Made by a program: the position numbers and the translations under genes
Assembly (NCBI RefSeq): GCF_963921235.1
Contig: NC_086109.1
Coordinates: 1,364,001-1,428,000, forward strand
Origin: Mobula hypostoma
Lineage: Eukaryota
DNA length: 64,000 nucleotides
Direction: 5' to 3'
Shown here: positions 9,249 to 60,339 of the stretch, one piece after another
Numbering within the stretch: position 1 is the stretch's first letter
Layout: each line of letters opens with the position of its first letter
Notes under the pieces: model-generated
What the model was told of the DNA's origin: nothing
The model's database searches: none
The model's input: the letters and a program-made list of their open reading frames with translations, nothing else

Positions 9249-9315
9249 ATGCGGAAGTTCTCCTTGTGGATGGCTCCTTTCCTGTTTTGTGTTGTGGTCT
9301 GTGCCATCTATGTGG
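9249..9315 (+). CDS. CD2/SLAM-family gene 1, exon 1 (signal peptide MRKFSLWMAPFLFCVVVCAIYV)
   Basis: ATG with A at -3, basic N-terminus plus hydrophobic core, phase-1 donor G|GTAAG at 9316; paralogous to 37883-37949 (79% nt identity). Confidence 0.88.
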
Positions 9316-10589: not shown

Positions 10590-13500
10590 CTTTGTGAGGG
10601 TAGAAGCAAAAAGTAGTAAGGAGAAAAGTAAAAGTGGCAGGCCGACAAATCCAGGGCAAGCATCAAAAAGGGCCACTTTTCAACATAATTGTATAAGGGC
10701 TAAGAGAGTTGTAAAAGAGCGCCTGAAGGCTTTGGGTGTCAATGCAAGGAGCATTCGTAACAAGGTGGATGAATTGAAAGTGCAGATTGTTATTAATGAT
10801 TATGATATAGTTGGGATCACAGAGACATGGCTCCAGGGTGACCAGGGATGGGAGCTCAACGTTCAGGGATATTCAATATTCAGGAGGGATAGACATGAAA
10901 GAAAAGGAGGTGGGGTGGCGTTGCTGGTTAAAGAGGAGATTAACACAATAGAAAGGAAGGACATAAGCCGGGAAGATGTGGAATCGATATGGGTAGAGCT
11001 GCATAACACTAAGAGGCAGAAAACGCTGGTGGGAGTTGTGTACAGGCCACCTAACAGTAGTAGTGAGGTCGGGGATGGTACTAAACAGGAAATTAGAAAT
11101 GTGTGCAATAAAGGAACAGCAGTTATAATGGGTGACTTCAATCTACATGTAGAATGGGTGAACCAAATTGGTAAAGGTGCTGAGGAAGAGGATTTCTTGG
11201 AATGTATGCGGGATGGTTTTTTGAACCAACATGTCGAGGAACAAACTAGAGAGCAGGCTATTCTAGACTGGGTTTTGAGCAATGAGGAAGGGTTAATTAG
11301 CAATCTTGTCGTGAGAGGCCCCTTGGGTAAGAGTGACCATAATATGGTGGAATTCTTCATTAAGGTGGGGAGTGACATAGTTAATTCAGAAACAAAGGTT
11401 CTGAACTTAAAGAAGGGTAACTTTGAAGGTATGAGACGTGAATTAGCTAAGATGGACTGGCAAATGACACTTAAAGGATTGACAGAGGATATGCAATGGC
11501 AAGCACTTAAAGATTGCATGGATGAACTACAACAATTGTTCATCCCAGTTTGGCAAAAGAATAAATCAAGGAAGGTAGTGCACCCGTGGCTGACAAGAGA
11601 AATTAGGGATGGTATCAATTCCAAAGAAGAAGCATACAAATTAGCCAGAAAAAGTGGCTCACCTGAGGACTGGGAGAAATTCAGAGTTCAGTAGAGGAGG
11701 ACAAAGGGCTTAATTAGGAAGGGGAAAAAAGATATTGAGAGAAAACTGGCAGGGAACATAAAAACGGACTGTAAAAGCTTTTATAGATATGTAAAAAGGA
11801 AAAGACTGGTAAAGACAAATGTAGGTCCCCTACAGACAGAAACAGGTGAATTGATTATGGGGAGCAAGGACATGGCAGACCAATTGAATAATTACTTTGG
11901 TTCTGTCTTCACTAAGGAGGACATAAATAATCTTCCAGAAATAGTTGGGGACAGAGGGTCCAGCGAGAGGGAGGAACTGAGCGAAATACATGTTAGTAGG
12001 GAAGTGGTGTTAGGTAAATTGAAGGGATTAAAGGCAGATAAATCCCCAGGGTCAGATGGTCTGCATCCCAGAGTGCTTAAGGAAGTAGCCCAAGAAATAG
12101 TGGATGCATTAGTGATAATTTTTCAAAACTCTTTAGATTCTGGACTAGTTCCTGAGGATTGGAGGGTGGCTAATGTCACCCCACTTTTTAAAAAAGGAGG
12201 GAGAGAGAAACCGAGGAATTATAGACCGGTTAGCCTAATGTCGGTGGTGGGGAAACTGCTGGAGTCAGTTATCAAAGATGTGATAACAGCACATTTGGAA
12301 AGCAGTGAAATCATCAGACAAAGTCAGCATGGATTTGTCAAAGGAAAATCATGTCTGATGAATCTCATAGAATTTTTTGAGGATGTAACTAGTAGAGTGG
12401 ATAGGGGAGAACCAGTGGATGTGGTATATTTGGATTTTCAAAAGGCTTTTGACAAGGTCCCACACAGGAGATTAGTGTGCAAACTTAAAGCACATGGTAT
12501 TGGGGGTAAGGTATTGATGTGGATAGAGAATTGGTTAGCAGACAGGAAGCAAAGAGTGGGAATAAACGGGACCTTTTCAGAATGGCAGGCAGTGACCAGT
12601 GGGGTACCGCAAGGCTCAGTGCTGGGACCCCAGTTGTTTACAATATATATTAATGACTTGGATGAGGGAATTAAATGCAGCATCTCCAAGTTTGCGGATG
12701 ACATGAAGCTGGGCAGCAGTGTTAGCTGTGAGGAGGATGCTAAGAGGATGCAGGGTGACTTGGATAGGTTGGGTGAGTGGCCAAATTCATGGCAGATGCA
12801 ATTTAATGTGGATAAATGTGAAGTTATCCACTTTGGTGGTAAAAACAGGAAAGCAGATTATTATCTAAATGGTGGCCGATTAGGAAAAGGGGAGGTGCAA
12901 CGAGACCTGGGTGTCGTTATACACCAGTCATCGAAAGTGGGCATGCAGGTACAGCAGGCGGTGAAAAAGGCAAATGGTATGCTGGCATTCATAGCAAGAG
13001 GATTCGAGTACAGAAGCAGGGAGGTACTACTGCAGTTGTACAAGGCCTTGGTGAGACCACACCTGGAGTATTGTCTGAAGTTTTGGTCCCCTAATCTGAG
13101 GAAAGACATTCTTGCCATAGAGGGAGTACAAAGCAGGTTCATATGAAGAAAGACTGGATGAACTAGGCTTGTGCTCGTTAGAAGAATTTAGAAGATTGAG
13201 GGGAGATCTGATTGAAACGTATAAAATCCTAAAGGGATTGGACAGGCTAGATGCAGGAAGATTGTTCCCGATGTTGGGGAAGTCCAGAACAAGGGGTCAC
13301 AGTTTGAGGATACAGGGGAAGCCTTTTAGGACCGAGATGAGGAAAAACTTCTTCACACAGAGAGTGGTGAATCTGTGGAATTCTCTGCCACAGGAAACAG
13401 TTGAGGCCGGTTCATTGGCTATATTTAAGAGGGAGTTAGATATGGCCCTTGTGGCTAGGGGGATCAGAGGGTATGGAGGGAAGGCTAGTGCAGGGTTCTG

Positions 13501-13592
13501 AGTTGGATGATCAGCCATGATCATAATAAATGGCGGTGCAGGCTCGAAGGGCCAAATGGCCTACTCCTGCACCTATTTTCTATGTTTCTATG
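10590..13592 (+). mobile_element. Young CR1 LINE, near-complete ORF2 (APE endonuclease + RT), in gene 1 intron 1
   Basis: VNARSIRNKVDEL, GITETWL, GVVYRPP, MGDFN, LGKSDH; [26 protein letters not shown]; one premature TAG at 11692, a short deletion near 13145, and a (tttctatg) tail. Confidence 0.96.
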
Positions 13593-14214
13593 TAACATTA
13601 ATCTCCTCTCCTGCCTATATCAACAACCTGTGACAGAACCCACCAGGCCCTGCAGACGTGCATAACTCGGAGTTCCTCAGTACACCCAACTCTTCCACAT
13701 GGCTGAGTGTATTAGCATTCCCCACGTTGATCTCATTGACATTCACATAGAAACCATTCAACCAGGAACATCACTGACATCAGCTGACTCTTGGCATTAA
13801 TTCCTTCTTATGCTTGTGGGCTGATTCTGCCCTCTCCCTTACCACACCCTTGTTTGGAGAGTAAGTATAAAACTACACATATAAAATGTATAAAAGGAGT
13901 GTGTGTGAAGGAGGGAGGAAGAACTTAGAGGGAGTTATTTGTAGGAATAAGTTGGGATATGGATTAAAGTGAAGCAGAAATGTTCAAATTTCAAGAGGGA
14001 TTTTGATGAGGTGCATCACAAAAGGATATATCGATAATAAAATTGCAAGTAACATTTTGGAGTGGATCAATATGAGAATGGCTAACAGGACACAGAGAAA
14101 GGAGTGTAAAGGATTCATTTTCTGGTTGGTGAGATTTAACAAGTGTGTGCAGCATCTGTGAACCATAAAAGCTTAACAACCCTGAGAACAAGTGAAAGGT
14201 GTCAGATCCATACA

Positions 14215-15005
14215 CACTGTCACAGCGTGCACCCCCAGACAATGGATCACACAAAGAGTGCAACTCCCTCTGCAAGGTCCCATTACACATCCCCACAGCA
14301 TGGGTCAGACACAGAATGAAGCTCCCTCTACACCATTCCATCACACACTCACAGGACACGGGTCAGACACACAGCGAAGATCCCTCTAAATCGTCCATCA
14401 CACACTCCCAGGACATGGGTCAGACACAGAGTGAAGCTCCCTCTACACTGTCCCATCACACACTCCCAGTACACGGGTCAGACACAGAGCGAAGCTGCCT
14501 CTACACCGTCCCATCACACACTCCCTCTACACTGTCCCATCACACATTCCCAGGGCAAGGGTCAGACACAGAGTGAAACTCCCTCTACATCGTCCATCAC
14601 ACACTCCCAGGACACGGGTCAGACACAGAATGAAGCTCCCTCTACACTGTCCCATCACACACTCCCAGGTCACGGGTCAGACACAGAGTGAAACTCCCTC
14701 TACACAGTCCCATCACACACTCCCAGGACATGGGTCAGACACAGAGTGAAACTCCCTCTACACTGTCCCATCACACACTCCCAGGACACGGGTCAGACAC
14801 AGAGTGAAACTCCCTCTACACTGTCCCATCACACACTCCCAGGTCACGGGTCAGACACAGAGTGAAACTCCCTCTGCACTGTCCCATCACACACTCCCAG
14901 GACATGGGTCAGACACAGAGTGAAGCCCCCTCTACACTGTCCCATCACACACTTCCAGGACACGGGTCAGACACAGAGTGAAACTCCCTCTACACTGTCC
15001 CATCA
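14215..15005. repeat. 58-bp minisatellite, ~13 copies, in gene 1 intron 1
   Basis: Unit CTGTCCCATCACACACTCCCAGGACACGGGTCAGACACAGAGTGAAGCTCCCTCTACA, same as the array at 43768-52350. Confidence 0.95.
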
Positions 15006-15232
15006 GACTCCCGGGGCATAGTGTGGAGCAGCTTCACTGTGTGTTTAATTTATGTGTTGGGACAGCGTAGATGCACGTACCAAATTATCCTTCTGTAATG
15101 TAGAAATGGGGGCTGGGTCTCACACTGAGGTGGTAGGTGGACAATGGATTGCATGGCCTGTTGCTATTTCTGTGATTTTCCCATCTCTATTCCCTGAGCT
15201 CACTGGCTGACTGCCTCCTCTTGTCTCCACAG

Positions 15233-15553
15233 CTGAGACTACGGCTTCCCATTGTACGGTGAACGGAGTCACTGGTCAGTGGGTTATCTTACCGTCTGAG
15301 TTCCCAGTCACACAGGACATTACTGAGGTCCAGTGGAATCAGAAATCAAACAGTATCAGAATAGTGCGGTACCTGAATGGAAAGTCCAACTTTCCTGATT
15401 CCATTTATAAGCAACGGGTAACGTTTTATTCTGGGAACTTCTCTCTGAAGATCGAGAATCTACGGATCGAGGATGCTGGTGATTATGAGGTGACTTTTAG
15501 AAGAGGGAATTCAGGAACTGAATCTGCAAAAATAATCCGGCTGGAGGTGAACG
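15233..15553 (+). CDS. CD2/SLAM-family gene 1, exon 2 (IgV domain lacking the canonical B-F disulfide)
   Basis: Acceptor ctgactgcctcctcttgtctccacag, donor G|GTGAGT, 321 nt, phase 1-1. Translation has VNGVTGQWVILP, EVQW, FSLKIENLRIEDAGDYEV and IRLEV, i.e. V-set motifs without B/F cysteines, as in CD2-family N-terminal domains. Confidence 0.92.
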
Positions 15554-16899
15554 GTGAGTGGAGGGGCCGAGGTGTCACCAGATCCTGAAACAGCCCCAAT
15601 TAGTGGGTGAGGGGAGATCCTGTATGTTCTCCCATTTACAGCCCCCCATTGACTGCCAGTGGCCAGTGCTCGGCTCAGCCTCCCAGTGTAGAGGGGCTGA
15701 GACAGTGCCAGGTTGGGGGACATGCACACTACATTCACGGAGACTGGACCAGGTCCTGTGAGGGTTAAATGAGGAATCTCAGGGCTCCAAAACAGGGGAA
15801 GATAAGCGCATAGGAGGGGAGAATGGAGAGCCTGTTTGGGGTGTTGGAGTGGGCTGCATGGCTTAGTGACAGAGGAAGAAATTATGAAGGCTGCTCCCTC
15901 AAAGAACTCATGGGACTGAAGGGACCCCATACATCTCTTCCACCGGTTCTCTAGCGTTAATGGGATGCAGTTCAAATATGGAGCTTACTAAGGGGGAATT
16001 GAGCAGAAATCATATTGGAGTTTATTGGGAGAGAGAAACAGGGTTCCAGTGACTTTCAAACAGGCCGAGAACACAGCATCTTGAAATGAGCATTGTGCTA
16101 TAATGGATTCAGCAGGTGAGGCAGCAAATATAAATGGGTCAATGTTTCATTTTGGAGGCCCTGGAGGAGAACTGTCTTGTTATGGATTTCTTCTTGGGAT
16201 TGTTGGCAGATTAACTAACAAGAAAAAGGAAGAGCTGCATTCTGTTTGGAGAAATAAAAGCTGAAGTAATCGAGAGGATACAAGTCTACCAGTGAAAGAG
16301 CTTATGGGCCAGTGCAGAAAGGAGCGAGAGTGCAGTACTGTGCTGAGAAGAGATGGGCTGGATTGCTCCTCCATGGAGCTAGTCTAGATTATGGGCTGAA
16401 TGGCCTTCACTCTGCTGTGATTTCACTGCAGAATGGGCTCTGTCATCTGTGGTCCATAATGAGGACCTGTCTATGCTGGGTCACTCTCAGGTGTATAAGA
16501 GAAAGAATGATGATTCATGGGAGTGACAAAAGACATGGAAACTGAGAGAAGTTTGTGGAGCGATTAATCCCAGAGTCTGCGTCGAATCTGTATCCTCAGA
16601 GAGTGTTGAAGTAGGAATGAGACCGAGATGTTAGTCAGAAGGGCGAGGGCTCACCCAGAGCACTCCTGCCCCACTCTAGCAGCACCGTCTACAGGTGATG
16701 ACAGGCTCAGCTCCCCTTCAGAGTGGGCACGTGTGGCCTCCAGTTTAGGCTGTTCTGGCCTTTATATCTGAACCTCACTACGTGAGTATAGTTTACAATG
16801 TTTCAGAATAATAGTATTCAAAAGATTCTTACAACGATATCTGCATTAGGTCCCACTCATCCCAGGCTCCCAGTAAGACAGTTGTCAGCACATGCTGTC

Positions 16900-18070
16900 T
16901 CTCCGGGAACACACAAGAAATACAACAGCAGTAGGAGATGGCCTGTTCCACCATTCCGGTATAGATCATGGCTAATCTGTACAAGTCACAGCTCCCCTTC
17001 TCTGCCATCTCCCTATCTCCCTCTACCGCTTAATAGGTCAAGCATTTCTCCAGATCCACTTAGAACATAGAACAGTACAGCACAGTACAGGCCCTTCAGC
17101 CCACAATGTTGTGCTGACCCTCAAACCCTGCCTGCCATATAAGCCTCCAACTTAAATTCCTCCATATACCTGTCTAGTAGTCTCTTAAACTTCACTAGTG
17201 TATCTGCCTCCACCACTGACTCAGGCAGTGCATTCCACGCACCAACCACTCTCTGAGTAAAAAACCTTCCTCTAATATCCCTCTTGAACTTCCCACCCCT
17301 TACCTTAAAGCCATGTCCTCTTGTATTGAGCAGTGCTGCCCTGGGGAAGAGGCACTGGCTACCCACACTATCTATTCCTCTTAATACCTCTATCATGTAT
17401 CCTCTCATCCTCCTTCTCTCCAAAGAGTAAAGCACTAGCTCCCTTAATCTCTGATCATAATGCATACTCTCTAAACCAGGCAGCATCCTGGTAAATCTCC
17501 TCTGTACCCTTTCCAATGCTTCCACATCCTTCCTATAGTGAGGCAACCAGAACTGGACACAGTACTCCAAGTGCCTAACCAGAGTTTTATAGAGCTGCAT
17601 CATTACATTGTGACTCCTAAACCCTATCCCTCGACTTATGAAAGCTAACACCCCATAAGCTTTCTTAATTACCCTATCCACCTGCTCCCTTCCTGTTCCT
17701 GAATTCCACTCATATTGACTCAAAAGAGGATCCTGCTACATTACCCACCCTTTCTGTAGCTGTAATAGTATCCCTGACCAGTAATGCTACCCCTCCTCCC
17801 CTTTTTCCACCCTCTCTATCCCTTTTAAAGCACTGAAATCCAGGAATATTGAGAATCCATTCCTGCCCTGGTGCCATCCAAGTCTCTGTAATGGCCACTA
17901 CATCATAATTCCATGTATGTATCCAAGCTCTCAGTTCATCACCTTTGTTCCTGATGCTTCTTGCATTGAGGTACACACATTTCAGCCCTTCTACCTTACT
18001 GTCTTTGCACCGTTTATTCTGCTTCTCTTTCCTCAAAGCCTCTCTGTATGTTAGATCTGGCTTCCACCAC
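16900..18070 (-). mobile_element. CR1 fragments (3' RT end with tails, joined to an endonuclease fragment)
   Basis: ORF 17121-17723 LYKTLVRHLEYCVQFW...FFTQRVVGAWNALP; ORF 17710-18036 YLNARSIRNKGDEL...AITETW. Confidence 0.9.
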
Positions 18071-18181
18071 CCACTGTCTCCAGGAATACCAGATATACAC
18101 TACCTAATGCTAGAATAAATTCCAACATACTGCAATGTTAAATGACCAGCCCCTTAGCTTACAGTTATGTCCCATTGTTCT

Positions 18182-18605
18182 AGCCCTTACATACTATTCA
18201 TATTCTATACCTTCACAGTATGGTCCGGGTCAGTTTTGACCCGGCCCAAGAATCCCCTCATAACAAGTGTCTATACCAAATTTTTGAACCACAGATCTAT
18301 TTAGAATGTATAAGTAGCCTATCTGACATTAATAAATGGGTGATTAATCCTTAATTAATGTTTCAGAAATCTAAAATCCATTTCAATAGATATGGGTCAA
18401 ATTTGACCCGGAACAACCTCAATGTACAAAAATTTGTAGCACCTGTACAAAAGTATAAAATTTTAAAATATTTTCATATTTGCGCATTTTGGGTCACTTT
18501 AGGAATAGTCATCAAATTTCAGCTAAAAAAATGGCACTTAGGATGTCTTTATTGCTGTCAAATGTCAAAACGGGTCAAATTTGACCCAAACATTATGTAT
18601 GGGCT
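18182..18605. mobile_element. piggyBac-like MITE (~420 bp) with imperfect TIRs
   Basis: Left end AGCCCTTACATA versus right end reverse complement AGCCCATACATA; three internal palindromes GGGTCA-N4-TGACCC at ~18227, 18394 and 18572; TTAA target sites are not preserved. Confidence 0.5.
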
Positions 18606-19399
18606 GGAGTCTGTCACTGGTGTAAACAGCACATTAACTCTGTTACAGCCCATTGGAGACATATCAATGAATACACCATCCCTTCTCCTCCTGAACACCC
18701 TGGAATTCAGAAACAAACTACGTAACCACTTTTGGTAGGATGAACCTCTGCAGGAATTACCCAAGTGAATCTCCAGTGGTCCACTGTCACTCTGAGACAA
18801 GTGTGATCTCACCAACACAGAGTACAATTGCAATAAAATTCCTCATTTTTAAACTCCAGTCCATTCACATTCGCCAAAATACAGTTTTCTTTCCTAACTG
18901 TTTGGTGGACCTGTCTGCTGGCACTTTTTAAGGACTCCTGCACTTGAATCACTCAATTGGTCTGCAATTCACTCACTTGCAGTCTCGCTCCATTCAAAGA
19001 TAACCTGCCTTTTCATTCCTCTAACTGGTGCACAGCCTCTCCATTCCCCGTATTATACTCAACTTTGCACTTTGCTCATCTTCTCTGCTCACCTTTCTTT
19101 CTCAATGCCCAAACTCAAAGCCCATGTGAGGTACACACATCATGGTACAGGACATTTTTACTTTTACAAGGCACTCCACAGCAGACGTAATTTGAACATG
19201 GGCCACAATAGCAGTCCAAGTCCAAATGTGTGTAGAGCCCTGAAAAGATATTGATGATCCGTCCTTGCAAAAGCCTTCCCTGCACAACAGATGGAAAATG
19301 AACTGAGAAATTAGACCTCTGGGGTTATGACTCTCCAGTGCCATAAGGTGGTCATCAGCTGTTTAAAAGACTGTAAGACATATGAATACACAGGGTATG

Positions 19400-22310
19400 G
19401 AAGAAAATAGATCTTGTATCAGGTAGGAACAACCTACCAGGGGGAAGCAACAGCAGCCGTGCCTCTGGCACTGAGTCTGGCCCTGTGCCTCAGAAGGGTA
19501 GGGAGCTCAGCAGGATGGCAGCAGTCATGGGGGACTCTATTGTTAGGGGGACAGATAGGCAGTTGGTGGACTCAAAAAAGAATCACAGATGGTAGTTTGC
19601 CTCCCAGGTGCCAGGGTCCACGATGTTTCTGAATGCGTCCGGCATATCCTGAATAGCCGGAGGTAGTGGTACATATTGGTACCAACAACATAGGTAGAAA
19701 AAGGGAGGAAGTCCTGAGGGAGTTAGGAAGGAAGCTAGGAAGCAGGAACTCAAGAGTAGTAATCTCGGGATTGCTGCCTGTGCCACGCGACAGTGAGGAT
19801 AGGAATAGAATGAGACGACAGATAAATGCATGGTTGAAGAATTGGAGCAGTGGGCAGGGATTCAGATTTCTGGATCATTGGAACTTCTTCTGGAGCCGGT
19901 GTGACCTGTACAAAAGGAACGGGTTACACTTGAAACAGAGGGGGACAAATATTCTTGTGGGCAGGTTTACTAGGAGCTGTTGAGGCATGAGAGAGGAGCT
20001 TGCCCAGGCTGACTGGAGGAGGGTACTAGGGGGATGGCGGCAGAGAAGAGCTGGCTGAAGTTTCTGGGAATAGTTCACAAGGCGCAGGACAGATATGTCC
20101 CACAGTAGAAGCAGCTCTGAAATGGCAGGGGTAGGCTGACAAGGGAACTTAAGGACTGCATAAAAGCCGAGGAAAGGGCACTTAAGTTTGAAAAAGTGAG
20201 TGGGAAGTTCGGTGATCACTTTTAAAATCTAACAAAAGGCACCTAAAAAAGCAATAAGAGGGGAAAAGATGAAATCTGAGGACAAACAAGCCAATAATAT
20301 AAAGCAGGAACTAAAAACTTTTACGGTTATATAAAGAATAAAAGGGACTTGAGAGTTGATATTGGGTCAGTGAGTATCAGAGAGCAGGTGTGAGAGCCAT
20401 TGCTATTACAAAGGAAGAAGTGCAGGGCAAGCTCAAGGGTCTTAAAGTGGATAAGCCACCTGGAACAGTTGGACTACATCCCGGAGTCCTGAGAGATGTT
20501 GCTAAAGAGATAAGGGATAGAAACATAGAAACATCGAAAACATACAGCACAATACAGGCCCTTCGGCCCACAAAGCTGTGCTGAACATGTCCCTACCTTA
20601 GAACTACTTAGGCTTTACCCATAGCCCTCTATTTTTCTAAGCTCCATGTACCTATCCAGGGGCCTCTTAAAAGACCCTATCGTATCCACTCCACCACCGT
20701 CACCTGCAGCTCATTCCACACACTCACCACTCTCTGCATAAAAACTTACCCCTGACATCTCCTCTGTACCTACTTCCAGACACTAAAACTTTGCCCTCTC
20801 GTGTTAGCCATTTCAGCCCTGGGTAAGATCCTCTGACTATCCACACGATCAATACCTCTCATTATCTTGAACACCTCTATCAGGTCACCGCTCATCTTCC
20901 GTTGCTCCAAGGAGAAAAGGCCGAGTTCACTCAAACTATTCTCATAAGGCATGCTCCCCAATCCAGGCAACACCCTTGTAAATATCCTCTGCACCCTTTC
21001 TATGGTTTCCACATCTTTCCTGTAGTGAGACTAATGATAAAATATGTCAAAGTCGGCATGGTTTCTATAAGGGAAACCTTGCCTGACAAATCTATTAGAG
21101 TTCTCCAGGGAAATAACAGGCAGGGTGGACAAAGGAGAGGCAGTGGATGTCACTAACTTGGATTTTCAGAAGGTATTTGATAAGGTGCCACACATGAGGC
21201 TGCTTAACAAGATAAAATCCCATGGCCTTACAGGAAAGATACTGGCATGGGTAGAGGAATGGCTGACAGGCAGGAGGCTATAAAGGGGTCTTTTCTGGCT
21301 GGCTGCCTGTGACTAGTGGTGTTCCTCAGGGGTCAGTATTAGGACCGCTACTTTTCACATTGTTTGTCAATGATTTAGATAATGGAATTAATAGCTTTGT
21401 GGTAAAGTTTGTGGATGATACGAAGATAGGTGGAGGGGTAGGCAGTGTTGAGGAGGCAATGAGATTGCAGCAGGACTTAGACAAATTGGAAGAATGGGCA
21501 ATAAAGTGGAAGATGGAATACAGTGTTGGGAAATGTATGATAATGCATTTTGGTAACAGGAACAATAGTGCAGCTTTTATTTAAATGGGGAGAAAATTCA
21601 AACATCAGAGGTGAAAAGTGAATAAGGAGTCCTCGTGTAAGACTCCCAGAAGGTTAATTTACAGGTTGAGTCTGTGGTAAAGAAGGCAAATGCAATGTTG
21701 GCATTTATTTCAAGGGGAATAGAATATAAAAGCGAGGAGATAATGCTGAGCCTTTGTAAGACACTAGTCAAACCGCACTTGGAATATTGTCGACAGTTTT
21801 GTGCTTCATATCTCAGGAAGGATGTATTGTCATTGGAGAGAGTCCAGAGGAGGTTCACGAGGATAATTCCAGGAAGGACGGGGCTAATATATAAGGAGAG
21901 TTTGGCAGCTTTGGGTCTGTACTCTCTGGAATTTAGAAGAATATGTGAGGATCTAATTGAAACCTACCGAATGTTGAAAGCACTAGATACGGTGGATGTG
22001 AAGAGGATGTTTCCTAAGGTGAGGGTGTCCAGAACTAGAGTCCGCAGCCTTAAATTGAGGGGTGACCCTTATAACAGAGTTAAGGAGGAATTTTTTAGCC
22101 ATAGGGTAGTAAATCTGTGGAACGACTGCAGCCAAATCCATGGGTATATTTAATGCGGAAGTCGATAGTTTCCTGATTGGTCAGGGTATCAAAGGATATG
22201 GCAATGAGGCAGGAGTCTGGGGTTGAGTGTGATCCAGGATCAGCCACGATGGAATGGCGAAGCAGACTCGATGGGCTGAATGGCCTAATTTGGCTCCTAT
22301 GTCTTATGGT
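19400..22310 (+). mobile_element. Decayed CR1 LINE (ORF1 esterase + ORF2 RT) with a nested minus-strand CR1 3' end at ~20518-21030
   Basis: ORF1 SGNH-esterase motifs GDSIVRG, CLPGARV, VHIGTNNIG, GLHL; [21 protein letters not shown]; the insert begins with the inverted tail gatagaaacatagaaac. Confidence 0.88.
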
Positions 22311-22374
22311 CCTCTGGAGAACGGATTTAAGTTAATTCAGAGATACTGGAGATTATGGAGGTATTGGAAATTTT

Positions 22375-23143: not shown

Positions 23144-23343
23144 ATACAGTACCTGATAAAATAACAACACCATGCACAGCAGCACACAGTACAACGAAAA
23201 CAGATGGGAAAATAAATAATATGTCAGGAGACGGTTCAAAGGAAAAAATGCGGAATACAGCAATCCCATTGGTACCTCAGAAAATGAGTCTACTGTTCGG
23301 ACTGGCAGTGATGGTAACCCTCCTGATTTCCCTCTCGCTGTGA
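23144..23343 (+). CDS. Candidate terminal exon of gene 1: Ser/Thr-rich stalk + C-terminal GPI-anchor signal
   Basis: Acceptor tattaat...tcttctctcgttccag, phase 1 matching exon 2; 66 open codons DTVPDKITTPCTAAHSTTKT...MRNTAIPLVPQKMSLLFGLAVMVTLLISLSL then TGA, i.e. a hydrophobic tail ending directly at the stop. Confidence 0.72.
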
Positions 23344-37882: not shown

Positions 37883-37949
37883 ATGTGGAAGTTCTCCATT
37901 AGGATGGTCCCCTCCCTACTTAGTGTTGTCATCTGCGCCATCTATGTGG
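37883..37949 (+). CDS. CD2/SLAM-family gene 2, exon 1 (signal peptide MWKFSIRMVPSLLSVVICAIYV)
   Basis: ATG in AAGATG context, hydrophobic core, phase-1 donor G|GTAAG at 37950; same length as gene 1 exon 1. Confidence 0.88.
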
Positions 37950-43767: not shown

Positions 43768-46700
43768 TGCCTCTACACTGTCCCATCACACACTCCCTCT
43801 ACACTGTCCCATCACACACTCCCTCTACACTGTCCCATCACACCCTCCCTCTACACTGTCCCGTCACACACTACCAGGACACGGGTCAGACACAGAGTGA
43901 AGCTCCCTCTACAGTGTCCCATCACACACTCCCAGGACACGGGTCAGACACAGAGTGAAGCTCCCTCTACACTGTCCCATCACACACTCCCAGGACACGG
44001 GTCAGACACAGAGTGAAGCTCCCTCTACACTGTCCCATCACACACTCCCAGGACACGGGACAGACACAGAGTGAAACTCCCTCTACATTGTCCCATCACA
44101 CACTCCCAGGAAACGGGTCAGACACAGAGTGAAACTCCCTCTACATTGTCCCATCACACACTCCCAGGAAACGGGTCAGACACAGAATGAAGCTCCCTCT
44201 ACACTGTCCCATCACACACTCCCAGGACAGGGGTCAGACGCAGAGTGAAGCTCCCGCTACACTGTCCCATCACACACTCCCAGGACACGGGACAGACACA
44301 GAGTGAAGCTCCCTCTACACTGACCCATCACACACTCCCAGGGCACGGGTCAGACACAGAGCGAAGCTCCCTCTACACTGTCCCATCACACACTCCAAGG
44401 ACACGGGTCAGACACAGAGTGAAGCTCCCTCTACACTGTCCCATCACACACTCCCAGGGCACGGGTCAGACACAGAGTGAAGCTCCCTCTACACTGTCCG
44501 ATCACACACTGCAAGGACACGGGTCAGGCACAGAGTGAAACTCCCTCTACAGTGTCCTATCACACATTCCCAGGGTACTGGTCAGACACAGAGTGAAACT
44601 CCCTCTACACTGTCCCATCACACACTCCCAGGACACGGGTCAGACACAGAGTGAAGCTCCATCTACACTGCCCAATCACACACTCCCAGGACACGGGTCA
44701 GACACACAGTGAAGCTCCCATAACACGGTCCCATCACACACTCCCAGGACACGGGTCAGACACAGAGTGAAACTCCCTCTATACTGTCCCATCACAGACT
44801 CCCAGGACACGGGTCAGACGCAGAGTGAAACTCCCTCTAGACTCTCCCATCACACACTCCCAGGGTCAGACACAGAATGAAACTCCCTCTACACTATCTC
44901 ATCACACACTCCCAGGACACGGGTCAGACACAGAGTGAAGCTCCCACTGCACTGTCCCATCACACACTCCCAGGACACGGGTCAGACACAGAGTGAAACT
45001 CCCTCTACATTGTCCAATCACACACTCCCAGGAAACGGGTCAGACACAGAGTGAAACTCCCTCTACATTGTCCCATCACACACTCCCAGGAAACGGGTCA
45101 GACACAGAGAGAAGCTCCCCCTACAGTGTCCCATCACACACTCCCAGGACATGGGTCAGAGACAGAGTGAAACTCCCTCTACACTGTCCCATCACACACT
45201 CCCAGGACACGGGTCAGACACAGAGTGAAGCTCGCTCTACACTGTCCTATCACACACTCCCAGGACACGGGTCAGACACAGAATGAAGCTCCCTCTACAC
45301 TGTCCCATCACACACTCCCAGGACACGGGTCAGACACAGAGTGAAACTCCCTCTACATTGTCCCATCACACACTCCCAGGAAACGGGTCAGACACAGAGT
45401 GAAACTCCCTCTACATTGTCCCATCACACACTCCCAGGAAACGGGTCAGACACAGAGCGAAGCTCCCTCTACAGTGTCCCATCACACACTCCCAGGACAC
45501 GGGTCAGACACAGAGTGAAACTCCCTCTACACTGTCCCATCACACACTCCCAGGACACGGGTCAGACACAGAGTGAAACTCCCTCTACATTGTCCCATCA
45601 CACACTCCCAGGAAACGGGTCAGACACAGAGTGAAACTCCCTCTACATTGTCCCATCACACACTCCCAGGAAACGGGTCAGACACAGAGTGAAACTCCCT
45701 CTACATTGTCCCATCACACACTCCCAGGAAACGGGTCAGACACAGAGCGAAGCTCCCTCTACAGTGTCCCATCACACACTCCCAGGACACGGGACAGACA
45801 CAGAGTGAAGCTCCCTCTACACTGACCCATCACACACTCCCAGGGCACGGGTCAGACACAGAGCGAAGCTCCCTCTACACTGTCCCATCACACACTCCAA
45901 GGACACGGGTCAGACACAGAGTGAAGCTCCCTCTACACTGTCCCATCACACACTCCCAGGGCACGGGTCAGACACAGAGCGAAGCTCCCTCTACACTGTC
46001 CCATCACACACTCCCAGGACGCGGGTCAGACACAGAGTGAAGCTCCCTCTACACTGCCCAATCACACACTCCCAGGACACGGGTCAGACACACAGTGAAG
46101 CTCCCATAACACGGTCCCATCACACACTCCCAGGACACGGGTCAGACACAGAGTGAAACTCCCTCTATACTGTCCCATCACAGACTCCCAGGACACGGGT
46201 CAGACGCAGAGTGAAACTCCGTCTAGACTCTCCCATCACACACTCCCAGGGTCAGACACAGAATGAAACTCCCTCTACACTATCTCATCACACACTCCCA
46301 GGACACGGGTCAGACACAGAGTGAAGCTCCCACTGCACTGTCCCATCACACACTCCCAGGACACGGGTCAGACACAGAGTGAAACTCCCTCTACATTGTC
46401 CCATCACACACTCCCAGGAAACGGGTCAGACACAGAGTGAAACTCCCTCTACATTGTCCCATCACACACTCCCAGGAAACGGGTCAGACACAGAGCGAAG
46501 CTCCCTCTACAGTGTCCCATCACACACTCCCAGGACACGGGTCAGACACAGAGTGAAGCTCGCTCTACACTGTCCCATCACACACTCCCAGGACACGGGT
46601 CAGACACAGAGTGAAGCTCGCTCTACACTGTCCTATCACACACTCCCAGGACACGGGTCAGACACAGAATGAAGCTCCCTCTACACTGTCCCATCACACA

Positions 46701-49700
46701 CTCCCAGGACAGGGGTCAGACGCAGAGTGAAGCTCCCGCTACACTGTCCCATCACACACTCCCAGGACACGGGACAGACACAGAGTGAAGCTCCCTCTAC
46801 ACTGTCCCATCACACACTCCAAGGACACGGGTCAGACACAGAGTGAAGCTCCCTCTACACTGTCCCATCACACACTCCCAGGGCACGGGTCAGACACAGA
46901 GCGAAGCTCCCTCTACACTGTCCCATCACACACTCCCAGGACGCGGGTCAGACACAGAGTGAAGCTCCCTCTACACTGTCCGATCACACACTGCAAGGAC
47001 ACGGGTCAGGCACAGAGTGAAACTCCCTCTACAGTGTCCTATCACACATTCCCAGGGTACGGGTCAGACACAGAGTGAAACACCCTCTACACTGTCCCAT
47101 CACACACTCCCAGGACACAGGTCAGACACAGAGTGAAGCTCCATCTACACTGCCCAATCACACACTCCCAGGACACGGGTCAGACACACAGTGAAGCTCC
47201 CATAACACGGTCCCATCACACACTCCCAGGACACGGGTCAGACACAGAGTGAAACTCCCTCTATACTGTCCCATCACAGACTCCCAGGACACGGGTCAGA
47301 CGCAGAGTGAAACTCCCTCTAGACTCTCCCATCACACACTCCCAGGGTCAGACACAGAATGAAACTCCCTCTACACTATCTCATCACACACTCCCAGGAC
47401 ATGGGTCAGACACAGAGTGAAGCTCCCACTGCACTGTCCCATCACACACTCCCAGGACACGGGTCAGACACAGAGTGAAACTCCCTCTACATTGTCCCAT
47501 CACACACTCCCAGGAAATGGGTCAGACACAGAGTGAAACTCCCTCCACATTGTCCCATCACACACTCCCAGGAAACGGGTCAGACACAGAGAGAAGCTCC
47601 CCCTACAGTGTCCCATCACACACTCCCAGGACATGGGTCAGACACAGAGTGAAACTCCCTCTACACTGTCCCATCACACACTCCCAGGACACGGGTGAGA
47701 CACAGAGTGAAGCTCGCTCTACACTGTCCTATCACACACTCCCAGGACACGGGTCAGACACAGAATGAAGCTCCCTCTACACTGTCCCATCACACACTCC
47801 CAGGACACGGGTCAGACACAGAGTGAAACTCCCTCTACATTGTCCCATCACACACTCCCAGGAAACGGGTCAGACACAGAGTGAAACTCCCTCTACATTG
47901 TCCCATCACACACTCCCAGGAAACGGGTCAGACACAGAGCGAAGCTCCCTCTACAGTGTCCCATCAGACACTCCCAGGACACGGGTCAGACACAGAGTGA
48001 AGCTCCCTCTACACTGTCCCATCACACACTCCCAGGACACGGGTCAGACACAGAGTGAAGCTCCCTCTACACTGTCCCATCACACACTCCCAGGACACGG
48101 GTCAGACACAGAGTGAAACTCCCTCTACATTGTCCCATCACACACTCCCAGGAAACGGGTCAGACACAGAGTGAAACTCCCTCTACATTGTCCCATCACA
48201 CACTCCCAGGAAACGGGTCAGACACACAGTGAAGCTCCCATAACACGGTCCCATCACACACTCCCAGGACACGGGTCAGACACAGAGTGAAACTCCCTCT
48301 ATACTGTCCCATCACAGACTCCCAGGACACGGGTCAGACACAGAGTGAAACTCCCTCTAGACTCTCCCATCACACACTCCCAGGGTCAGACACAGAATGA
48401 AACTCCCTCTACACTATCTCATCACACACTCCCAGGACACGGGTCAGACACAGAGTGAAGCTCCCTCTGCACTGTCCCATCACACACTCCCAGGACACGG
48501 GTCAGACACAGAGTGAAACTCCCCCTACATTGTCCCATCACACACTCCCAGGAAACGGGTCAGACACAGAGTGAAACTCCCTCTACATTGTCCCATCACA
48601 CACTCCCAGGAAACGGGTCAGACACAGAGTGAAACTCCCTCTACATTGTCCCATCACACACTCCCAGGAAACGGGTGAGACACAGAGCGAAGCTCCCCCT
48701 ACAGTGTCCCATCACACACTCCCAGGACATGGGTCAGACACAGAGTGAAACTCCCTCTACACTGTCCCATCACACACTCCCAGGACACGGGTCAGACACA
48801 GAGTGAAGCTCGCTCTACACTGTCCTATCACACACTCCCAGGACACGGGTCAGACACAGAATGAAGCTCCCTCTACACTGTCCCATCACACACTCCCAGG
48901 ACACGGGTTAGACACAGAGTAAAACTCCCTCTACATTGTCCCATCACACACTCCCAGGAAACGGGTCAGACACAGAGTGAAACTCCCTCTACATTGTCCC
49001 ATCACACACTCCCAGGAAACGGGTCAGACACAGAGCGAAGCTCCCTCTACAGTGTCCCATCACACACTCCCAGGACACGGGTCAGACACAGAGTGAAGCT
49101 CGCTCTACACTGTCCCATCACACACTCCCAGGACACGGGTCAGACACAGAGTGAAGCTCGCTCTACACTGTCCTATCACACACTCCCAGGACACGGGTCA
49201 GACACAGAAAGAAGCTCCCTCTACACTGTCCCATCACACACTCCCAGGACAGGGGTCAGACGCAGAGTGAAGCTCCCGCTACACTGTCCCATCACACACT
49301 CCCAGGACACGGGACAGACACAGAGTGAAGCTCCCTCTACACTGACCCATCACACACTCCCAGGGCACGGGTCAGACACAGAGCGAAGCTCCCTCTACAC
49401 TGTCCCATCACAGACTCCCAGGACACGGGTCAGACACAGAGTGAAACTCCCTCAAGACTCTCCCATCACACACTCCCAGGGTCAGACACAGAATGAAACT
49501 CCCTCTACACTATCGCATCACACACTCCCAGGACACGGGTCAGACACAGAGTGAAGCTCCCTCTGCACTGTCCCATCACACACTCCCAGGACACGGGTCA
49601 GACACAGAGTGAAACTCCCTCTACATTCTCCCATCACACACTCCCAGGAAACGGGTCAGACACAGAGTGAAACTCCCTCTACATTGTCCCATCACACACT

Positions 49701-52350
49701 CCCAGGAAACGGGTCAGACACAGAGTGAAACTCCCTCTACATTGTCCCATCACACACTCCCAGGAAACGGGTGAGACACAGAGCGAAGCTCCCCCTACAG
49801 TGTCCCATCACACACTCCCAGGACATGGGTCAGACACAGAGTGAAACTCCCTCTACACTGTCCCATCACACACTCCCAGGACACGGGTCAGACACAGAGT
49901 GAAGCTCGCTCTACACTGTCCTATCACACACTCCCAGGACACGGGTCAGACACAGAATGAAGCTCCCTCTACACTGTCCCATCACACACTCCCAGGACAC
50001 GGGTTAGACACAGAGTAAAACTCCCTCTACATTGTCCCATCACACACTCCCAGGAAACGGGTCAGACACAGAGTGAAACTCCCTCTACATTGTCCCATCA
50101 CACACTCCCAGGAAACGGGTCAGACACAGAGCGAAGCTCCCTCGACAGTGTCCCATCACACACTCCCAGGACACGGGTCAGACACAGAGTGAAGCTCGCT
50201 CTACACTGTCCCATCACACACTCCCAGGACACGGGTCAGACACAGAGTGAAGCTCGCTCTACACTGTCCTATCACACACTCCCAGGACACGGGTCAGACA
50301 CAGAATGAAGCTCCCTCTACACTGTCCCATCACACACTCCCAGGACAGGGGTCAGACGCAGAGTGAAGCTCCCGCTACACTGTCCCATCACACACTCCCA
50401 GGACACGGGACAGACACAGAGTGAAGCTCCCTCTACACTGACCCATCACACACTCCCAGGGCACGGGTCAGACACAGAGCGAAGCTCCCTCTACACTGTC
50501 CCATCACACACTCCAAGGACACGGGTCAGACACAGAGTGAAGCTCCCTCTACACTGTCCCATCACACACTCCCAGGGCACGGGTCAGACACAGAGCGAAG
50601 CTCCCTCTGCACTGTCCCATCACACACTCCCAGGACGCGGGTCAGACACAGAGTGAAGCTCCCTCTACACTGTCCGATCACACACTGCAAGGACACGGGT
50701 CAGGCACAGAGTGAAACTCCCTCTACAGTGTCCTATCACACATTCCCAGGGTACGGGTCAGACACAGAGTGAAACTCCCTCCACACTGTCCCATCACACA
50801 CTCCCAGGACACGGGTCAGACACAGAGTGAAGCTCCATCTACACTGCCCAATCACACACTCCCAGGACACGGGTCAGACACACAGTGAAGCTCCCATAAC
50901 ACGGTCCCATCACACACTCCCAGGACACGGGTCAGACACAGAGTGAAACTCCCTCTATACTGTCCCATCACAGACTCCCAGGACACGGGTCAGACGCAGA
51001 GTGAAACTCCCTCTAGACTCTCCCATCACACACTCCCAGGGTCAGACACAGAATGAAACTCCCTCTACACTATCTCATCACACACTCCCGGGACACGGGT
51101 CAGACACAGAGTGAAACTCCCTCTACATTGTCCCATCACACACTCCCAGGAAACGGGTCAGACACAGAGAGAAGCTCCCCCTACAGTGTCCCATCACACA
51201 CTCCCAGGACACGGGTCAGACATAGAATGAAGCTCCCTTTACACTGTCCCATCACACACTCCCAGGACACAGGTCAGACACAGAGTGAAACTCCCTCTAC
51301 AGTGTCCCATCACACACTCCCAGGACATGGGTCAGACACAGAGTGAAACTCCCTTTTAACTGTCAGATCACACACTGCAAGGACACGGGTCAGACACAGA
51401 GTGAAACTCCCTCTACATTGTCCCATCACACACTCCCAGGAAACGGGTCAGACACAGAATGAAGCTCCCTCTACACTCTCCCATCACACACTCCCAGGAC
51501 AGGGGTCAGACGCAGAGTGAAGCTCCCGCTACACTGTCCCATCACACACTCCCAGGACACGGGACAGACACAGAGTGAAGCTCCCTCTACACTGACCCAT
51601 CACACACTCCCAGGGCACGGGTCAGACACAGAGCGAAGCTCCCTCTACACTGTCCCATCACACACTCCAAGGACACGGGTCAGACACAGAGTGAAGCTCC
51701 CTCTACACTGTCCCATCACACACTCCCAGGGCACGGGTCAGACACAGAGCGAAGCTCCCTCTACACTGTCCCATCACACACTCCCAGGACGCGGGTCAGA
51801 CACAGAGTGAAACTCCCTCTATACTGTCCCATCACAGACTCCCAGGACACGGGTCAGACACAGAGTGAAACTCCCTCTAGACTCTCCCATCACACACTCC
51901 CAGGGTCAGACACAGAATGAAACTCCCTCTCCACTATCTCATCACACACTCCCAGGACACGGGTCAGACACAGAGTGAAGCTCCCTCTGCACTGTCCCAT
52001 CACACACTCGCAGGACACGGGTTAGAAACAGAGTGAAGTTCCCTCTACACTGTCCCATCACACACTCCCAGGACACGGGTCAGATACAGAGTGAAACTCC
52101 CTCTACACTGTCCCATCACACACTCCCAGGACACGGGTCAGACACAGAGTGAAATTCCCTCTACACTGTCCCATCACACACTCGCAGGACACGGGTTAGA
52201 AACAGAGTGAAGTTCCCTCTACAGTGGCCTATCATACACTGCCAGGGCAGAGGTTAGATCAGAGTGAAGCTCCCTCTGCATTGACCCACTACATTTTCCC
52301 AAGGCACGGTTTAGACACAGAGTGAAGCTCTCTCTACACTGTCCCCTCAC
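43768..52350. repeat. 58-bp minisatellite, ~148 copies (8.6 kb), with higher-order structure, in gene 2 intron 1
   Basis: Same unit as 14215-15005; recurring variant cassettes and 52-bp deletion units; 26-bp partial units at the left edge. Confidence 0.98.
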
Positions 52351-52705
52351 ACCCCCATGACATGGTTCAGAGCAGCTTCATTATGTGTGTAATCTGCATG
52401 GTGGGACTATGTAGATGCAGCTACCTTGTCTTCCCTCACCATGTTCACCCTCCCCGTCTCAGACTTGTCCACCGAAATCTGGTTGCAGACTTCAACTTCC
52501 GTCTTCGGAGACGGCTACAGATAGTAAACAGTCTGTTCACCCTTGGCCTCGCTGTGTGATTTAGGAACTGAGAGCTGGATCTCTCAAATGGGTAGAGTTC
52601 AGACAATGGGCCGCATGGCGTGCTGTGTGTCTGTGACTCTCTGAGCTCCGATACTTCCTCTGGTCACTGAGCTCACCTGCTGACTGTCTCGTCTTGTCTC
52701 CTCAG

Positions 52706-53026
52706 CTGGGACTGGGGCTTCCGGTACCACTGTGTACACAATCCCTGGGAAACGTGTCACCTTGCTGTCTGGGATCACAGCCGGACCGCACATTGCTGAG
52801 GTTGAGTGGAAACGGTCATCGCCCAGAACCACGTTAGTGCGATACTCGAAAACCAACACTAAATATTTTGAATCCATTTACACGGGACGGATTAAGCTTA
52901 ATCTCAGTAACTTCAATCTGGAAATCCTGGATCTATGGAAAAATGATACTGGTGATTTTGAGGTTATTTTTACAAAAGATAATTCAGGACTTGAAAACAG
53001 AAAGCTAATCCGACTGGAGGTGTACG
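52706..53026 (+). CDS. CD2/SLAM-family gene 2, exon 2 (cysteine-less IgV domain)
   Basis: Acceptor ctgactgtctcgtcttgtctcctcag, donor G|GTAAGT, 321 nt, phase 1-1; GKRVTLLS, EVEW, FNLEILDLWKNDTGDFEV, IRLEVY; gap-free alignment to gene 1 IgV. Confidence 0.93.
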
Positions 53027-55369: not shown

Positions 55370-55660
55370 AGCTGGTGTCAGGAGCAAACATCGTGGTTCA
55401 GAACTGCACTGGGACTTGTAACCTTAAGCTGACCTGCTCCGTGACTTCGGGCGACGCCATCAGCTTCACGTGGCAGAGGGAAGGAGAAATTGTGGGGAAT
55501 GACAGCACCCATCAGCTCGGGGGACTCGGAGAGACGCTACTGGTTCGTCAGACAGCAGAGGCTAAGGACGTTCCGTACAACTGTGAGGTCGGAAACCCTC
55601 TCAACACAGTGGTGGCAGGTATCAAACTGGAGCGGCACGCCTGTAAACTGCGCTCATCCG
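55370..55660 (+). CDS. CD2/SLAM-family gene 2, exon 3 (IgC2 domain)
   Basis: Acceptor catcttctccgtctcag, donor G|GTGAGT, 291 nt, phase 1-1; NCTGTCNLKLTCSV...FTW...YNCEVGNP...HAC matches the SLAM/CD2 C2 pattern (TC...LTC...W...YxC...NP...C). Confidence 0.92.
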
Positions 55661-60265: not shown

Positions 60266-60339
60266 ATTACTTCCACCATGCACCGGGAGAGAGAATTCCC
60301 GAGATTCACCATCTTCTACCAGAAGATATTTCAACACCT

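What the first reader, a model, noticed from the sequence alone, without database searches (positions are those of the whole stretch)
15233..15553. IgV domains of the two paralogs look to be under diversifying selection
The 107-aa domains align without gaps at 43/107 (40%) identity. Among the 32 conserved codons in the last 76 positions, only 7 differ synonymously. The signal exons are 79% identical in nucleotides. Residues 36-56 (C-C'-C'' region, part of the GFCC'C'' ligand face in CD2/SLAM proteins) share only 4/21 residues. This points to changed ligand specificity or pathogen-driven selection.
Basis: partly seen in the sequence, partly recalled or inferred. Interest (0 to 1): 0.7.

Follow-up and report, generated by a model that had tools for sequence, protein, structure and literature searches.

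The report
Fast-diverging devil-ray SLAM/CD48-like V domains
Two neighbouring immune-surface genes of the CD2/SLAM family in a devil ray have kept their outer binding domain intact while changing its amino acids at least as fast as silent sites change. That fits adaptive divergence but does not prove it, and it is a familiar pattern for this gene family.

Summary
Window 15233-15553 and 52706-53026 are two 321-nt phase-1 IgV exons.

The genome is Mobula hypostoma. Copy B is RefSeq XP_062922442.1 ("Ly-9-like"): signal, V, C2 and a GPI-like tail. Copy A is in none of the protein collections searched and has signal, V and tail only.

Profile and fold searches place the V domains nearest to CD48, CD84, 2B4 and CD2.

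Pairwise dN/dS over the whole domain is 1.25 (NG86) to 1.6 (codon ML). This is not significantly above 1 (p 0.12-0.22), but values below 0.5 are excluded. Sites that vary across 39 other ray and sawfish V domains give omega 2.3-4.6 (p 0.024 and 0.008). Family-conserved sites give about 0.7.

Both exons have no stop codon and no indel, where 5.6 indels are expected at the intron rate. The changes are split evenly between the two copies. Simple pseudogene decay is therefore unlikely.

Measured against the adjacent introns (K about 0.5), the excess nearly disappears.

Verdict: fast, probably partly adaptive divergence, at about even odds. Multi-species tests could not be run because no orthologue DNA was obtainable. 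This is a new member of a known kind. The scan noted a similar V-only gene 1.25 Mb away.

The parts
9249..9315 (+). Gene A, exon 1: ATG plus signal peptide (MRKFSLWMAPFLFCVVVCAIYV), phase-1 donor G|GTAAGT
   Evidence: Alignment with the copy B leader. Coordinates and 53/67 identity come.
15233..15553 (+). Gene A, IgV exon (the finding): 321 nt, phase 1/1. It encodes a 106-residue V-set domain without the canonical B-F cysteine pair.
   Evidence: Pfam V-set E=1.2e-9 and Receptor_2B4 E=2.7e-5. AF2 model pLDDT 87.7. Nearest solved folds are 2B4, CD84, CD2 and CD48.
23144..23343 (+). Gene A, last exon: phase-1 acceptor, Thr/Pro-rich stalk, then a 19-residue hydrophobic C-terminus that ends at the stop codon. 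This is a GPI-signal-like tail with no cytoplasmic part.
   Evidence: It is 61/66 residues identical to the tail of the annotated copy B protein P0004. GPI attachment itself is inferred, not tested.
37883..37949 (+). Gene B, exon 1: signal peptide of XP_062922442.1
   Evidence: It matches residues 1-22 of P0004.
52706..53026 (+). Gene B, IgV exon: the paralogue of 15233-15553, with the same length and phases
   Evidence: It equals residues 23-129 of P0004. Pfam V-set E=2.3e-4.
55370..55660 (+). Gene B, C2-set Ig exon (phase 1/1, with extra cysteine pairs as in SLAM-family C2 domains). Gene A has no counterpart.
   Evidence: A family C2 profile hits only this exon in the window (E=1.4e-39) and nothing in the gene A locus.
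14230..15005 (+). 58-bp satellite at the 3' end of intron 1 of gene A, shared with gene B
   Evidence: Tandem Repeats Finder and blastn between the two loci.
43845..52371 (+). The same 58-bp satellite, expanded to about 148 copies (8.5 kb), in intron 1 of gene B

Best explanation
A and B are sister tandem duplicates of a CD48-like gene. That is, a SLAM/CD2-family gene with a GPI-type tail and no signalling motifs, within a large and fast-evolving ray multigene family.

Since the duplication, both V exons have stayed under selection for an intact, folded V-set domain. Their amino acids have nevertheless been replaced at 1.2-1.6 times the synonymous rate. The excess falls on positions that are free to vary across the family. 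Copy A changed mainly in the BC loop and the C-C'-C'' region. Copy B changed mainly in A', D, E-F and F.

The most likely reading is positive (diversifying) selection on part of the domain surface, which gave the two paralogues different binding specificities. Purifying selection preserved the core and the G strand.

Shown here: the gene models, family membership, the rates, the intactness of both exons, and the even split of changes. Inferred: that the excess is adaptive, that it changes ligand specificity, GPI anchoring, and that copy A is expressed.
For: - Whole-domain omega is 1.25 (NG86) and 1.55-1.60 (ML). Omega<0.5 is excluded. NG86 reads low at this transition bias: its median is 0.85 when the true omega is 1.
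- At family-variable sites, defined without using A or B, omega is 2.35 (p=0.024) and 4.64 (p=0.008). Simulation gives P=0.019 and 0.014.
- Constraint persisted. A and B are identical at 23/35 family-conserved sites against 19/71 other sites (p=2.6e-4).
- Neither exon has a stop codon. The chance of that is 0.03-0.2 per neutrally evolving lineage, depending on its share of the divergence.
- There is no indel in 321 nt, where 5.6 are expected at the flanking-intron rate (P=0.004).
- Both copies changed: 23 A-derived, 20 B-derived and 21 double changes. Seven shared-derived residues mark them as sisters.
- Within the family's main clade of 32 V domains, both have the longest paths from the clade's common ancestor: 1.04 and 0.96 against a median of 0.50.
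- The signal exon has omega of about 0.4, and the tail is 61/66 identical. The acceleration is therefore specific to the V domain.
- SLAM-family receptors are known pathogen targets (PMC4718992). Positively selected residues are reported in the Ig domains of SLAMF6 and SLAMF7 (bioRxiv 10.64898/2026.09.21.753075).
Against: - The whole-domain test does not reject omega=1 (p 0.12-0.22).
- The significant results rest on 36-71 codons, two thresholds and one sequence pair at high divergence (t about 2 substitutions per codon).
- dS inside the exon (0.37) is lower than K in the adjacent introns (0.49-0.52). Against that yardstick, dN is about neutral.
- Omega at family-conserved sites is 0.65-0.74, which is weak constraint and fits general relaxation.
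- Divergence is not confined to the ligand-binding face.
- There is no evidence that copy A is expressed, and it is absent from the protein collections.
- There are no orthologue or population data.
Confidence: 0.45

Rival explanations
1. Relaxed constraint without adaptation. After duplication in a redundant multigene family, surface sites of both V domains drift at the neutral rate (omega about 1). Only the fold-determining core and the reading frame are kept. Apparent omega>1 is sampling noise plus a slightly low dS.
For: - The whole-domain omega cannot be distinguished from 1.
- dN (0.46-0.52) equals the adjacent-intron K (0.49-0.52).
- Mid-exon dS is 0.52 against dN 0.50-0.55.
- Conserved-site omega is as high as 0.65-0.74.
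- The whole family is variable at the same positions.
Against: Family-variable classes give omega 2.3-4.6 with p 0.008-0.024, and simulations under omega=1 reach the observed values in only 1-2% of runs. Neutral drift cannot raise dN above the neutral rate.
Confidence: 0.33
2. Mosaic ancestry or gene conversion. The two V exons descend from older, different V lineages of the family. Leader, introns and tail were homogenised later by unequal crossing-over or conversion. On this reading the 40% identity reflects age, not speed.
For: - The tail is 61/66 identical and the signal exon 79% identical, against 40% for V.
- Non-coding divergence is uneven: 0.29-0.30 near the leader against 0.49-0.52 beside the V exon.
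- The ML tree places A and B in different subclades.
- Each is closer to stingray or sawfish V domains (50% and 57%) than to the other (40%).
- The ends of V exon B match about 20 other genomic contigs at 90-95%.
Against: - dS of the V exons is only 0.37, no higher than the flanking introns. The introns align right up to the exon, including the shared 58-bp satellite.
- Seven shared-derived residues unite A and B.
- The AU test does not reject an A+B clade (p=0.42), and both are long branches.
Confidence: 0.14
3. Copy A is a decaying truncated duplicate. It lost its C2 exon, is not annotated, and may be silent. The high dN/dS would simply be its neutral decay compared with a conserved copy B.
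For: - Gene A has no C2 exon or remnant.
- No protein containing A's V domain is in the collections.
- No listed RNA run holds it.
- The scan found another unannotated V-only relative 1.25 Mb away with no sign of expression (s1-142158; not tested here).
Against: - Changes are shared equally: 23 A-derived against 20 B-derived. A keeps 27/35 family-conserved residues and B keeps 26/35.
- All three A exons are open with canonical splice sites.
- There are no stops or indels in the V exon.
- The RNA-like runs also lack the annotated copy B, so they say nothing about A.
Confidence: 0.08

Closest known systems
CD48 (SLAMF2), the GPI-anchored member of the mammalian SLAM/CD2 family
   Same: - It is the best sequence-profile match among solved structures (2edo, E=3.9e-14; 2ptt).
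- The fold match has TM 0.82-0.88.
- The V domain lacks the intersheet disulfide.
- Copy B has the V + C2 + hydrophobic C-terminal tail architecture without ITSM motifs.
   Different: - Identity to mammalian CD48 V domains is only 22-32%. Orthology is not shown, and RefSeq names copy B 'Ly-9-like'.
- Copy A has no C2 domain at all.
- GPI anchoring is inferred from sequence only.
SLAM-family receptors with positively selected or pathogen-targeted V domains (SLAMF1 as morbillivirus receptor; SLAMF6 and SLAMF7)
   Same: Same family and same domain type. Pathogens are documented to use the V-domain face (PMC4718992). Positively selected residues are reported in these Ig domains (bioRxiv 10.64898/2026.09.21.753075).
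   Different: Those cases rest on multi-species codon models and known ligands. Here there is one paralogue pair, no known ligand, and no ITSM tail.
Expanded ray and sawfish SLAM-like multigene family (RefSeq 'SLAM family member 5/8/9-like', 'Ly-9-like', 'CD48 antigen-like' of Hemitrygon akajei, Hypanus sabinus, Pristis pectinata, Mobula birostris)
   Same: V domains are 37-57% identical to A and B, with the same exon length and motifs (GNFSLEI, DxGDYEV, RLEVY). Many members carry TxYxx[VI] tails and C2 domains.
   Different: Within the family's main clade, A and B have the longest paths from the common ancestor, about twice the median. They carry a GPI-like tail instead of a transmembrane and ITSM tail.

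Membership tests
CD2/SLAM family (IgV domain) | N-terminal V-set Ig domain that lacks the canonical B-F intersheet disulfide | tested here: met
   Pfam V-set hits: A at E=1.2e-9, B at E=2.3e-4. Neither copy has a Cys at the B-strand or F-strand positions: V17-x-L19, and Y/F84-E-V86 instead of Y-x-C. The AF2 model shows strands A'BCC'C''DEFG.
CD2/SLAM family (IgV domain) | Closest sequence and fold relatives are CD48, CD84, 2B4, NTB-A, CD2 and CD58 | tested here: met
   Profile search against PDB: CD48 3.9e-14, CD84 8.1e-12, CD2 1.3e-9, SLAMF6 1.3e-9, 2B4 3.8e-7. The Foldseek top ranks are 2B4, CD84, CD2 and CD48, with TM 0.79-0.88.
CD2/SLAM family (ectodomain architecture) | Membrane-proximal C2-set domain after the V domain | tested here: not met
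   This is met for copy B (exon 55370-55660; family C2 profile E=1.4e-39). It is not met for copy A, the copy in the finding: no C2 exon or remnant lies between 15553 and 23144 or elsewhere in its locus.
SLAM family proper (signalling members) | Cytoplasmic ITSM motifs (TxYxxV/I) that recruit SAP/EAT-2 | tested here: not met
   Both tails end in a hydrophobic stretch at the stop codon with no cytoplasmic residues. The same is true of CD48. Other family members from rays do carry TIYANV, TVYANI, TIYAEV or TLYDTV.
CD48-like GPI-anchored subgroup | GPI attachment: small omega-site residues, a polar spacer, and a C-terminal hydrophobic signal that is removed | not testable with these tools
   The sequence is compatible...RNTAIPLVPQK followed by 19 hydrophobic residues to the stop codon. 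No GPI predictor or experiment was available.
Genes under positive (diversifying) selection | dN/dS significantly above 1 over the domain | tested here: inconclusive
   Omega is 1.25-1.60. Fisher p=0.22, LRT p=0.12, simulation P=0.08. There is no excess over adjacent-intron divergence.
Genes under positive (diversifying) selection | A class of sites with omega>1 while the rest is constrained | tested here: met
   Met only nominally. Sites variable in 39 other family V domains give omega 2.35 (p=0.024) and 4.64 (p=0.008). Family-conserved sites give 0.74. This rests on one sequence pair, with thresholds chosen here.
Genes under positive (diversifying) selection | Support from multi-species site or branch-site models, or from polymorphism (MK test) | not testable with these tools
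   Orthologue DNA could not be fetched: the assemblies are too large or hold no record. Only the source individual's DNA runs hold the locus.

The most novel reading that the evidence does not exclude
The locus holds a pair of GPI-anchored, signalling-dead SLAM-family ligand or decoy molecules. One is reduced to a single V domain. Their V exons are being driven apart by an arms race, with a pathogen adhesin or with rapidly evolving paired receptors of the same ray family. Meanwhile the stalk and GPI tail are kept near-identical by gene conversion. The V exon would thus be actively shielded from the homogenisation that acts on the rest of the gene.
Probability: 0.15. Interest if true: 0.55.

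Novelty: new member of a known kind. Interest (0 to 1): 0.35.

Why it matters
Almost nothing is known about SLAM/CD2-family biology in cartilaginous fishes. A full-text search for the family together with cartilaginous fish found only incidental mentions.

If the adaptive reading holds, this tandem pair would be a compact example of specificity divergence in the oldest jawed-vertebrate lineage. It includes an unusual V-only, GPI-tailed form. It would also give concrete candidate residues for binding studies.

As it stands, this is an ordinary example of a fast-evolving immune-receptor paralogue pair. The rate signal is clean but statistically modest.

Tried and rejected
- Searches for A's V domain among proteins of similar length found nothing. 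A search with copy B's protein found only 4 distant relatives and no Mobula orthologue.
- Fetching coding DNA of copy B's full gene, of the nearest stingray relative and of a Mobula birostris relative failed. The files were too large or there was no record. I therefore ran no multi-species codon model, no dS for the tail exon and no conversion test.
- Expression could not be assessed. No listed run holds A's exon. The three RNA-like runs of the species also lack the annotated copy B, so absence means nothing.
- The conserved block at 19380-20020 against 61810-62460 looked like a shared exon but is a transposon fragment. The block at 5400-5700 against 33448-33740 is non-coding purine-rich sequence.
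- A weak C2-like match upstream of B's C2 exon (55116-55160, E 0.2-1.4) is not credible.
- Biopython YN00 failed on the V exon pair.
- Solvent exposure could not be computed because model coordinates are not exposed. I used family conservation as the independent site partition instead.
- No complex prediction was run, because no binding claim is made.
- The N run at 32974-33447 was left untouched.

Full report
**What is at the coordinates**

Window 15233-15553 is a 321-nt exon on the + strand. It has an AG acceptor, a GT donor and phase 1 at both ends. It encodes a 106-residue Ig V-set domain plus split codons. tblastn of that domain against the window finds exactly one other copy, at 52706-53026. 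That copy has the same length and phases, 40% identity and E=5.5e-19.

- 42/106 whole codons are identical, plus the shared split Ala codon, giving 43/107.
- Of the 32 conserved codons in the last 76 positions, 7 differ synonymously.
- The signal exons are 53/67 (79%) identical.
- Residues 36-56 share 4/21 residues.

**Gene models and organism**

Each V exon is preceded by its own leader exon: 9249-9315 for A and 37883-37949 for B.

Copy B has a C2-set exon at 55370-55660. It is identical to RefSeq XP_062922442.1, "T-lymphocyte surface antigen Ly-9-like" of Mobula hypostoma, 292 aa. Its gene spans 37.2 kb, so its last exon lies beyond the window.

Copy A splices in phase to a last exon at 23144-23343. 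That exon encodes a Thr/Pro-rich stalk and a 19-residue hydrophobic C-terminus that runs to the stop codon. It is 61/66 identical to copy B's tail.

Copy A has no C2 exon or remnant. No protein containing its V domain is in the collections.

Both genes carry the same 58-bp satellite in intron 1. There are about 13 copies in A and about 148 copies in B.

**Family**

- Pfam gives V-set and, for A, Receptor_2B4.
- A profile of 41 V domains hits CD48, CD84, CD2, SLAMF6, 2B4 and CD58 first among solved structures.
- A confident AF2 model (pLDDT 87.7, pTM 0.80) is closest to 2B4, CD84, CD2 and CD48, with TM 0.79-0.88.
- An exhaustive HMMER search finds 577 relatives. The best are SLAM-like proteins of stingrays, sawfish and manta, many with C2 domains and TxYxx[VI] motifs.

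A and B are therefore CD48-like members of a large ray SLAM/CD2 family, with a GPI-type tail and no ITSM. Copy A is reduced to V only.

**Are A and B sisters?**

Each is more similar to V domains of other species (50% and 57%) than to the other (40%). The ML tree puts them in different subclades. Both are long branches, however, and an A+B clade is not rejected (AU p=0.42).

Several lines point to a tandem duplication:
- The flanking introns align up to the exon.
- Seven residues are shared by A and B against the family consensus: S21, I29, V44, I57, F88, N92, I101.
- dS is moderate, at 0.37.

Within the family's main clade of 32 V domains, A and B have the longest paths from the common ancestor: 1.04 and 0.96 against a median of 0.50.

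**Rates**

| Measure | Result |
|---|---|
| NG86, whole domain | dN 0.464, dS 0.372, omega 1.25 |
| Bootstrap 95% interval | 0.74-2.17 |
| P(omega<0.5) | 0.0002 |
| Fisher test for omega>1 | p=0.22 |
| Codon ML (GY94, F3x4) | omega 1.60, kappa 2.3 |
| LRT against omega=1 | p=0.12 |
| Simulation under omega=1 | NG86 reads low (median 0.85); observed value reached in 8% of runs |
| Signal exon | omega about 0.4 |

Strong or moderate purifying selection on the V domain is excluded. A whole-domain excess over neutrality is not established.

**Is it just decay?**

Three observations argue against decay:
- A neutral lineage carrying half or all of the divergence would keep the exon free of stops with probability about 0.10 or about 0.035.
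- At the indel rate of the flanking introns, 5.6 indels are expected in 321 nt, and none is seen (P=0.004).
- I classified sites by conservation in 39 other family V domains. A and B are identical at 23/35 conserved sites but at only 19/71 others (p=2.6e-4).

Polarising on the family consensus gives 23 A-derived, 20 B-derived and 21 double changes. A keeps 27/35 conserved residues and B keeps 26/35. Both copies have therefore been maintained as folded domains, and both have changed.

**Is there a class with omega>1?**

| Site class (by family conservation) | Codons | Omega (ML) | p vs omega=1 |
|---|---|---|---|
| Conserved (>=0.8) | 35 | 0.74 | not significant |
| Variable (<0.8) | 71 | 2.35 | 0.024 |
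| Most variable (<0.6) | 36 | 4.64 | 0.008 |

NG86 gives 0.65, 1.62 and 2.48 for the same classes. Simulations under omega=1 reach the observed values in 1.9% and 1.4% of runs.

This is the main support for positive selection. Its caveats:
- I tried two thresholds.
- Only one sequence pair is available.
- Few synonymous changes fall in each class.
- Divergence is high.

**A second neutral yardstick weakens the case**

Aligned non-coding sequence has K80 of 0.29-0.30 near the leader but 0.49-0.52 immediately beside the V exon. Mid-exon dS is also about 0.5.

Against the adjacent introns, nonsynonymous change is not elevated overall (p=0.64). It is only marginally elevated at the most variable sites (p=0.039). 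Against all aligned introns the same comparisons give p=0.055 and p=0.0009.

**Where the changes lie**

By the model's strands, identity is 0/4 in the BC loop, 0/8 across C'-C'', and 0/4 in strand D, which is on the opposite sheet. It is 5/9 in F and 7/11 in G.

A-derived changes cluster in the BC, C, CC' and C'' region. B-derived changes cluster in A', D, E-F and F.

It is also the region that varies family-wide, and the centre of the GFCC'C'' face is conserved. The ligand-face argument is therefore only weakly supported.

**Other evidence**

- Only the source individual's DNA runs hold the locus. Three RNA-like runs of the species hold neither A nor the annotated B, so expression is unknown.
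- In the DNA contigs, the first ~35 and last ~50 nt of B's V exon match about 20 other contigs at 90-95%. This shows a large gene family with conserved exon ends.
- The tail is 92% identical at the protein level while V is 40%. This suggests either conversion of the 3' part or a mosaic history. I could not test that without copy B's tail DNA.

**Comparison with what is known**

SLAM-family V domains are documented pathogen targets. Examples are SLAMF1 with the measles virus H protein, GPI-anchored CD48 with FimH, and cytomegalovirus SLAMF-like decoys (PMC4718992). Positively selected residues are reported in the Ig domains of SLAMF6 and SLAMF7 (bioRxiv 10.64898/2026.09.21.753075).

Fast V-domain evolution in a SLAM-family paralogue pair is thus a known kind of thing. 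What is new is the lineage (a devil ray) and the V-only GPI-tailed form. The scan noted a similar V-only gene 1.25 Mb away (s1-142158; not tested here).

**Verdict**

The V domains evolve at or somewhat above the neutral rate while clearly being maintained.

| Reading | Odds |
|---|---|
| Genuine positive selection on a subset of sites | about 0.45 |
| Neutral drift of unconstrained surface sites | about 0.33 |
| Mosaic ancestry or gene conversion | about 0.14 |
| Decay of copy A | about 0.08 |

The decisive multi-species and population tests need DNA that these tools could not fetch.

Noticed in passing
window 23144-23343 and protein P0004:227-292: The stalk and GPI-like tail exons of the two paralogues are 61/66 residues identical, while their V domains are 40% identical. 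This suggests gene conversion or a younger origin of the 3' part. Copy B's tail DNA lies beyond the window.
   Followed up: partly
window 9249-23343 (gene A): An intact three-exon V-only gene (signal, V, GPI-like tail) has no C2 exon or remnant. It is absent from the protein collections, so it is apparently unannotated.
   Followed up: yes
window 14230-15005 and 43845-52371: The same 58-bp satellite (CTCCCTCTACACTGTCCCATCACACACTCCCAGGACACGGGTCAGACACAGAGTGAAG) sits just upstream of both V exons. It has about 13 copies in gene A and about 148 copies (8.5 kb, 90% matches) in gene B.
   Followed up: no
window 52655-52741 and 52976-53053: In the source individual's DNA contigs, the acceptor region plus first codons and the last codons plus donor of V exon B match about 20 further contigs at 90-95%. 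The exon ends are conserved at nucleotide level across a large gene family in this genome.
   Followed up: partly
window 6449-8133: A 40-bp tandem repeat with 42 copies and 92% matches lies upstream of the gene A leader.
   Followed up: no
window 53601-54482: A degenerate 33-bp tandem repeat (about 27 copies, 75% matches) lies in gene B's intron between the V and C2 exons.
   Followed up: no
window 3424-5297, 10723-13600, 19386-22150, 27536-28105, 34534-35860, 57343-64000: Retrotransposon ORFs (reverse-transcriptase and endonuclease-like) fill much of the introns and spacers. One pair (12304-13600 against 34534-35860) is 92% identical. The block at 19380-20020 against 61810-62460 is a shared transposon, not an exon.
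   Followed up: partly
window 32974-33447: A run of 474 N lies between the two genes.
   Followed up: no
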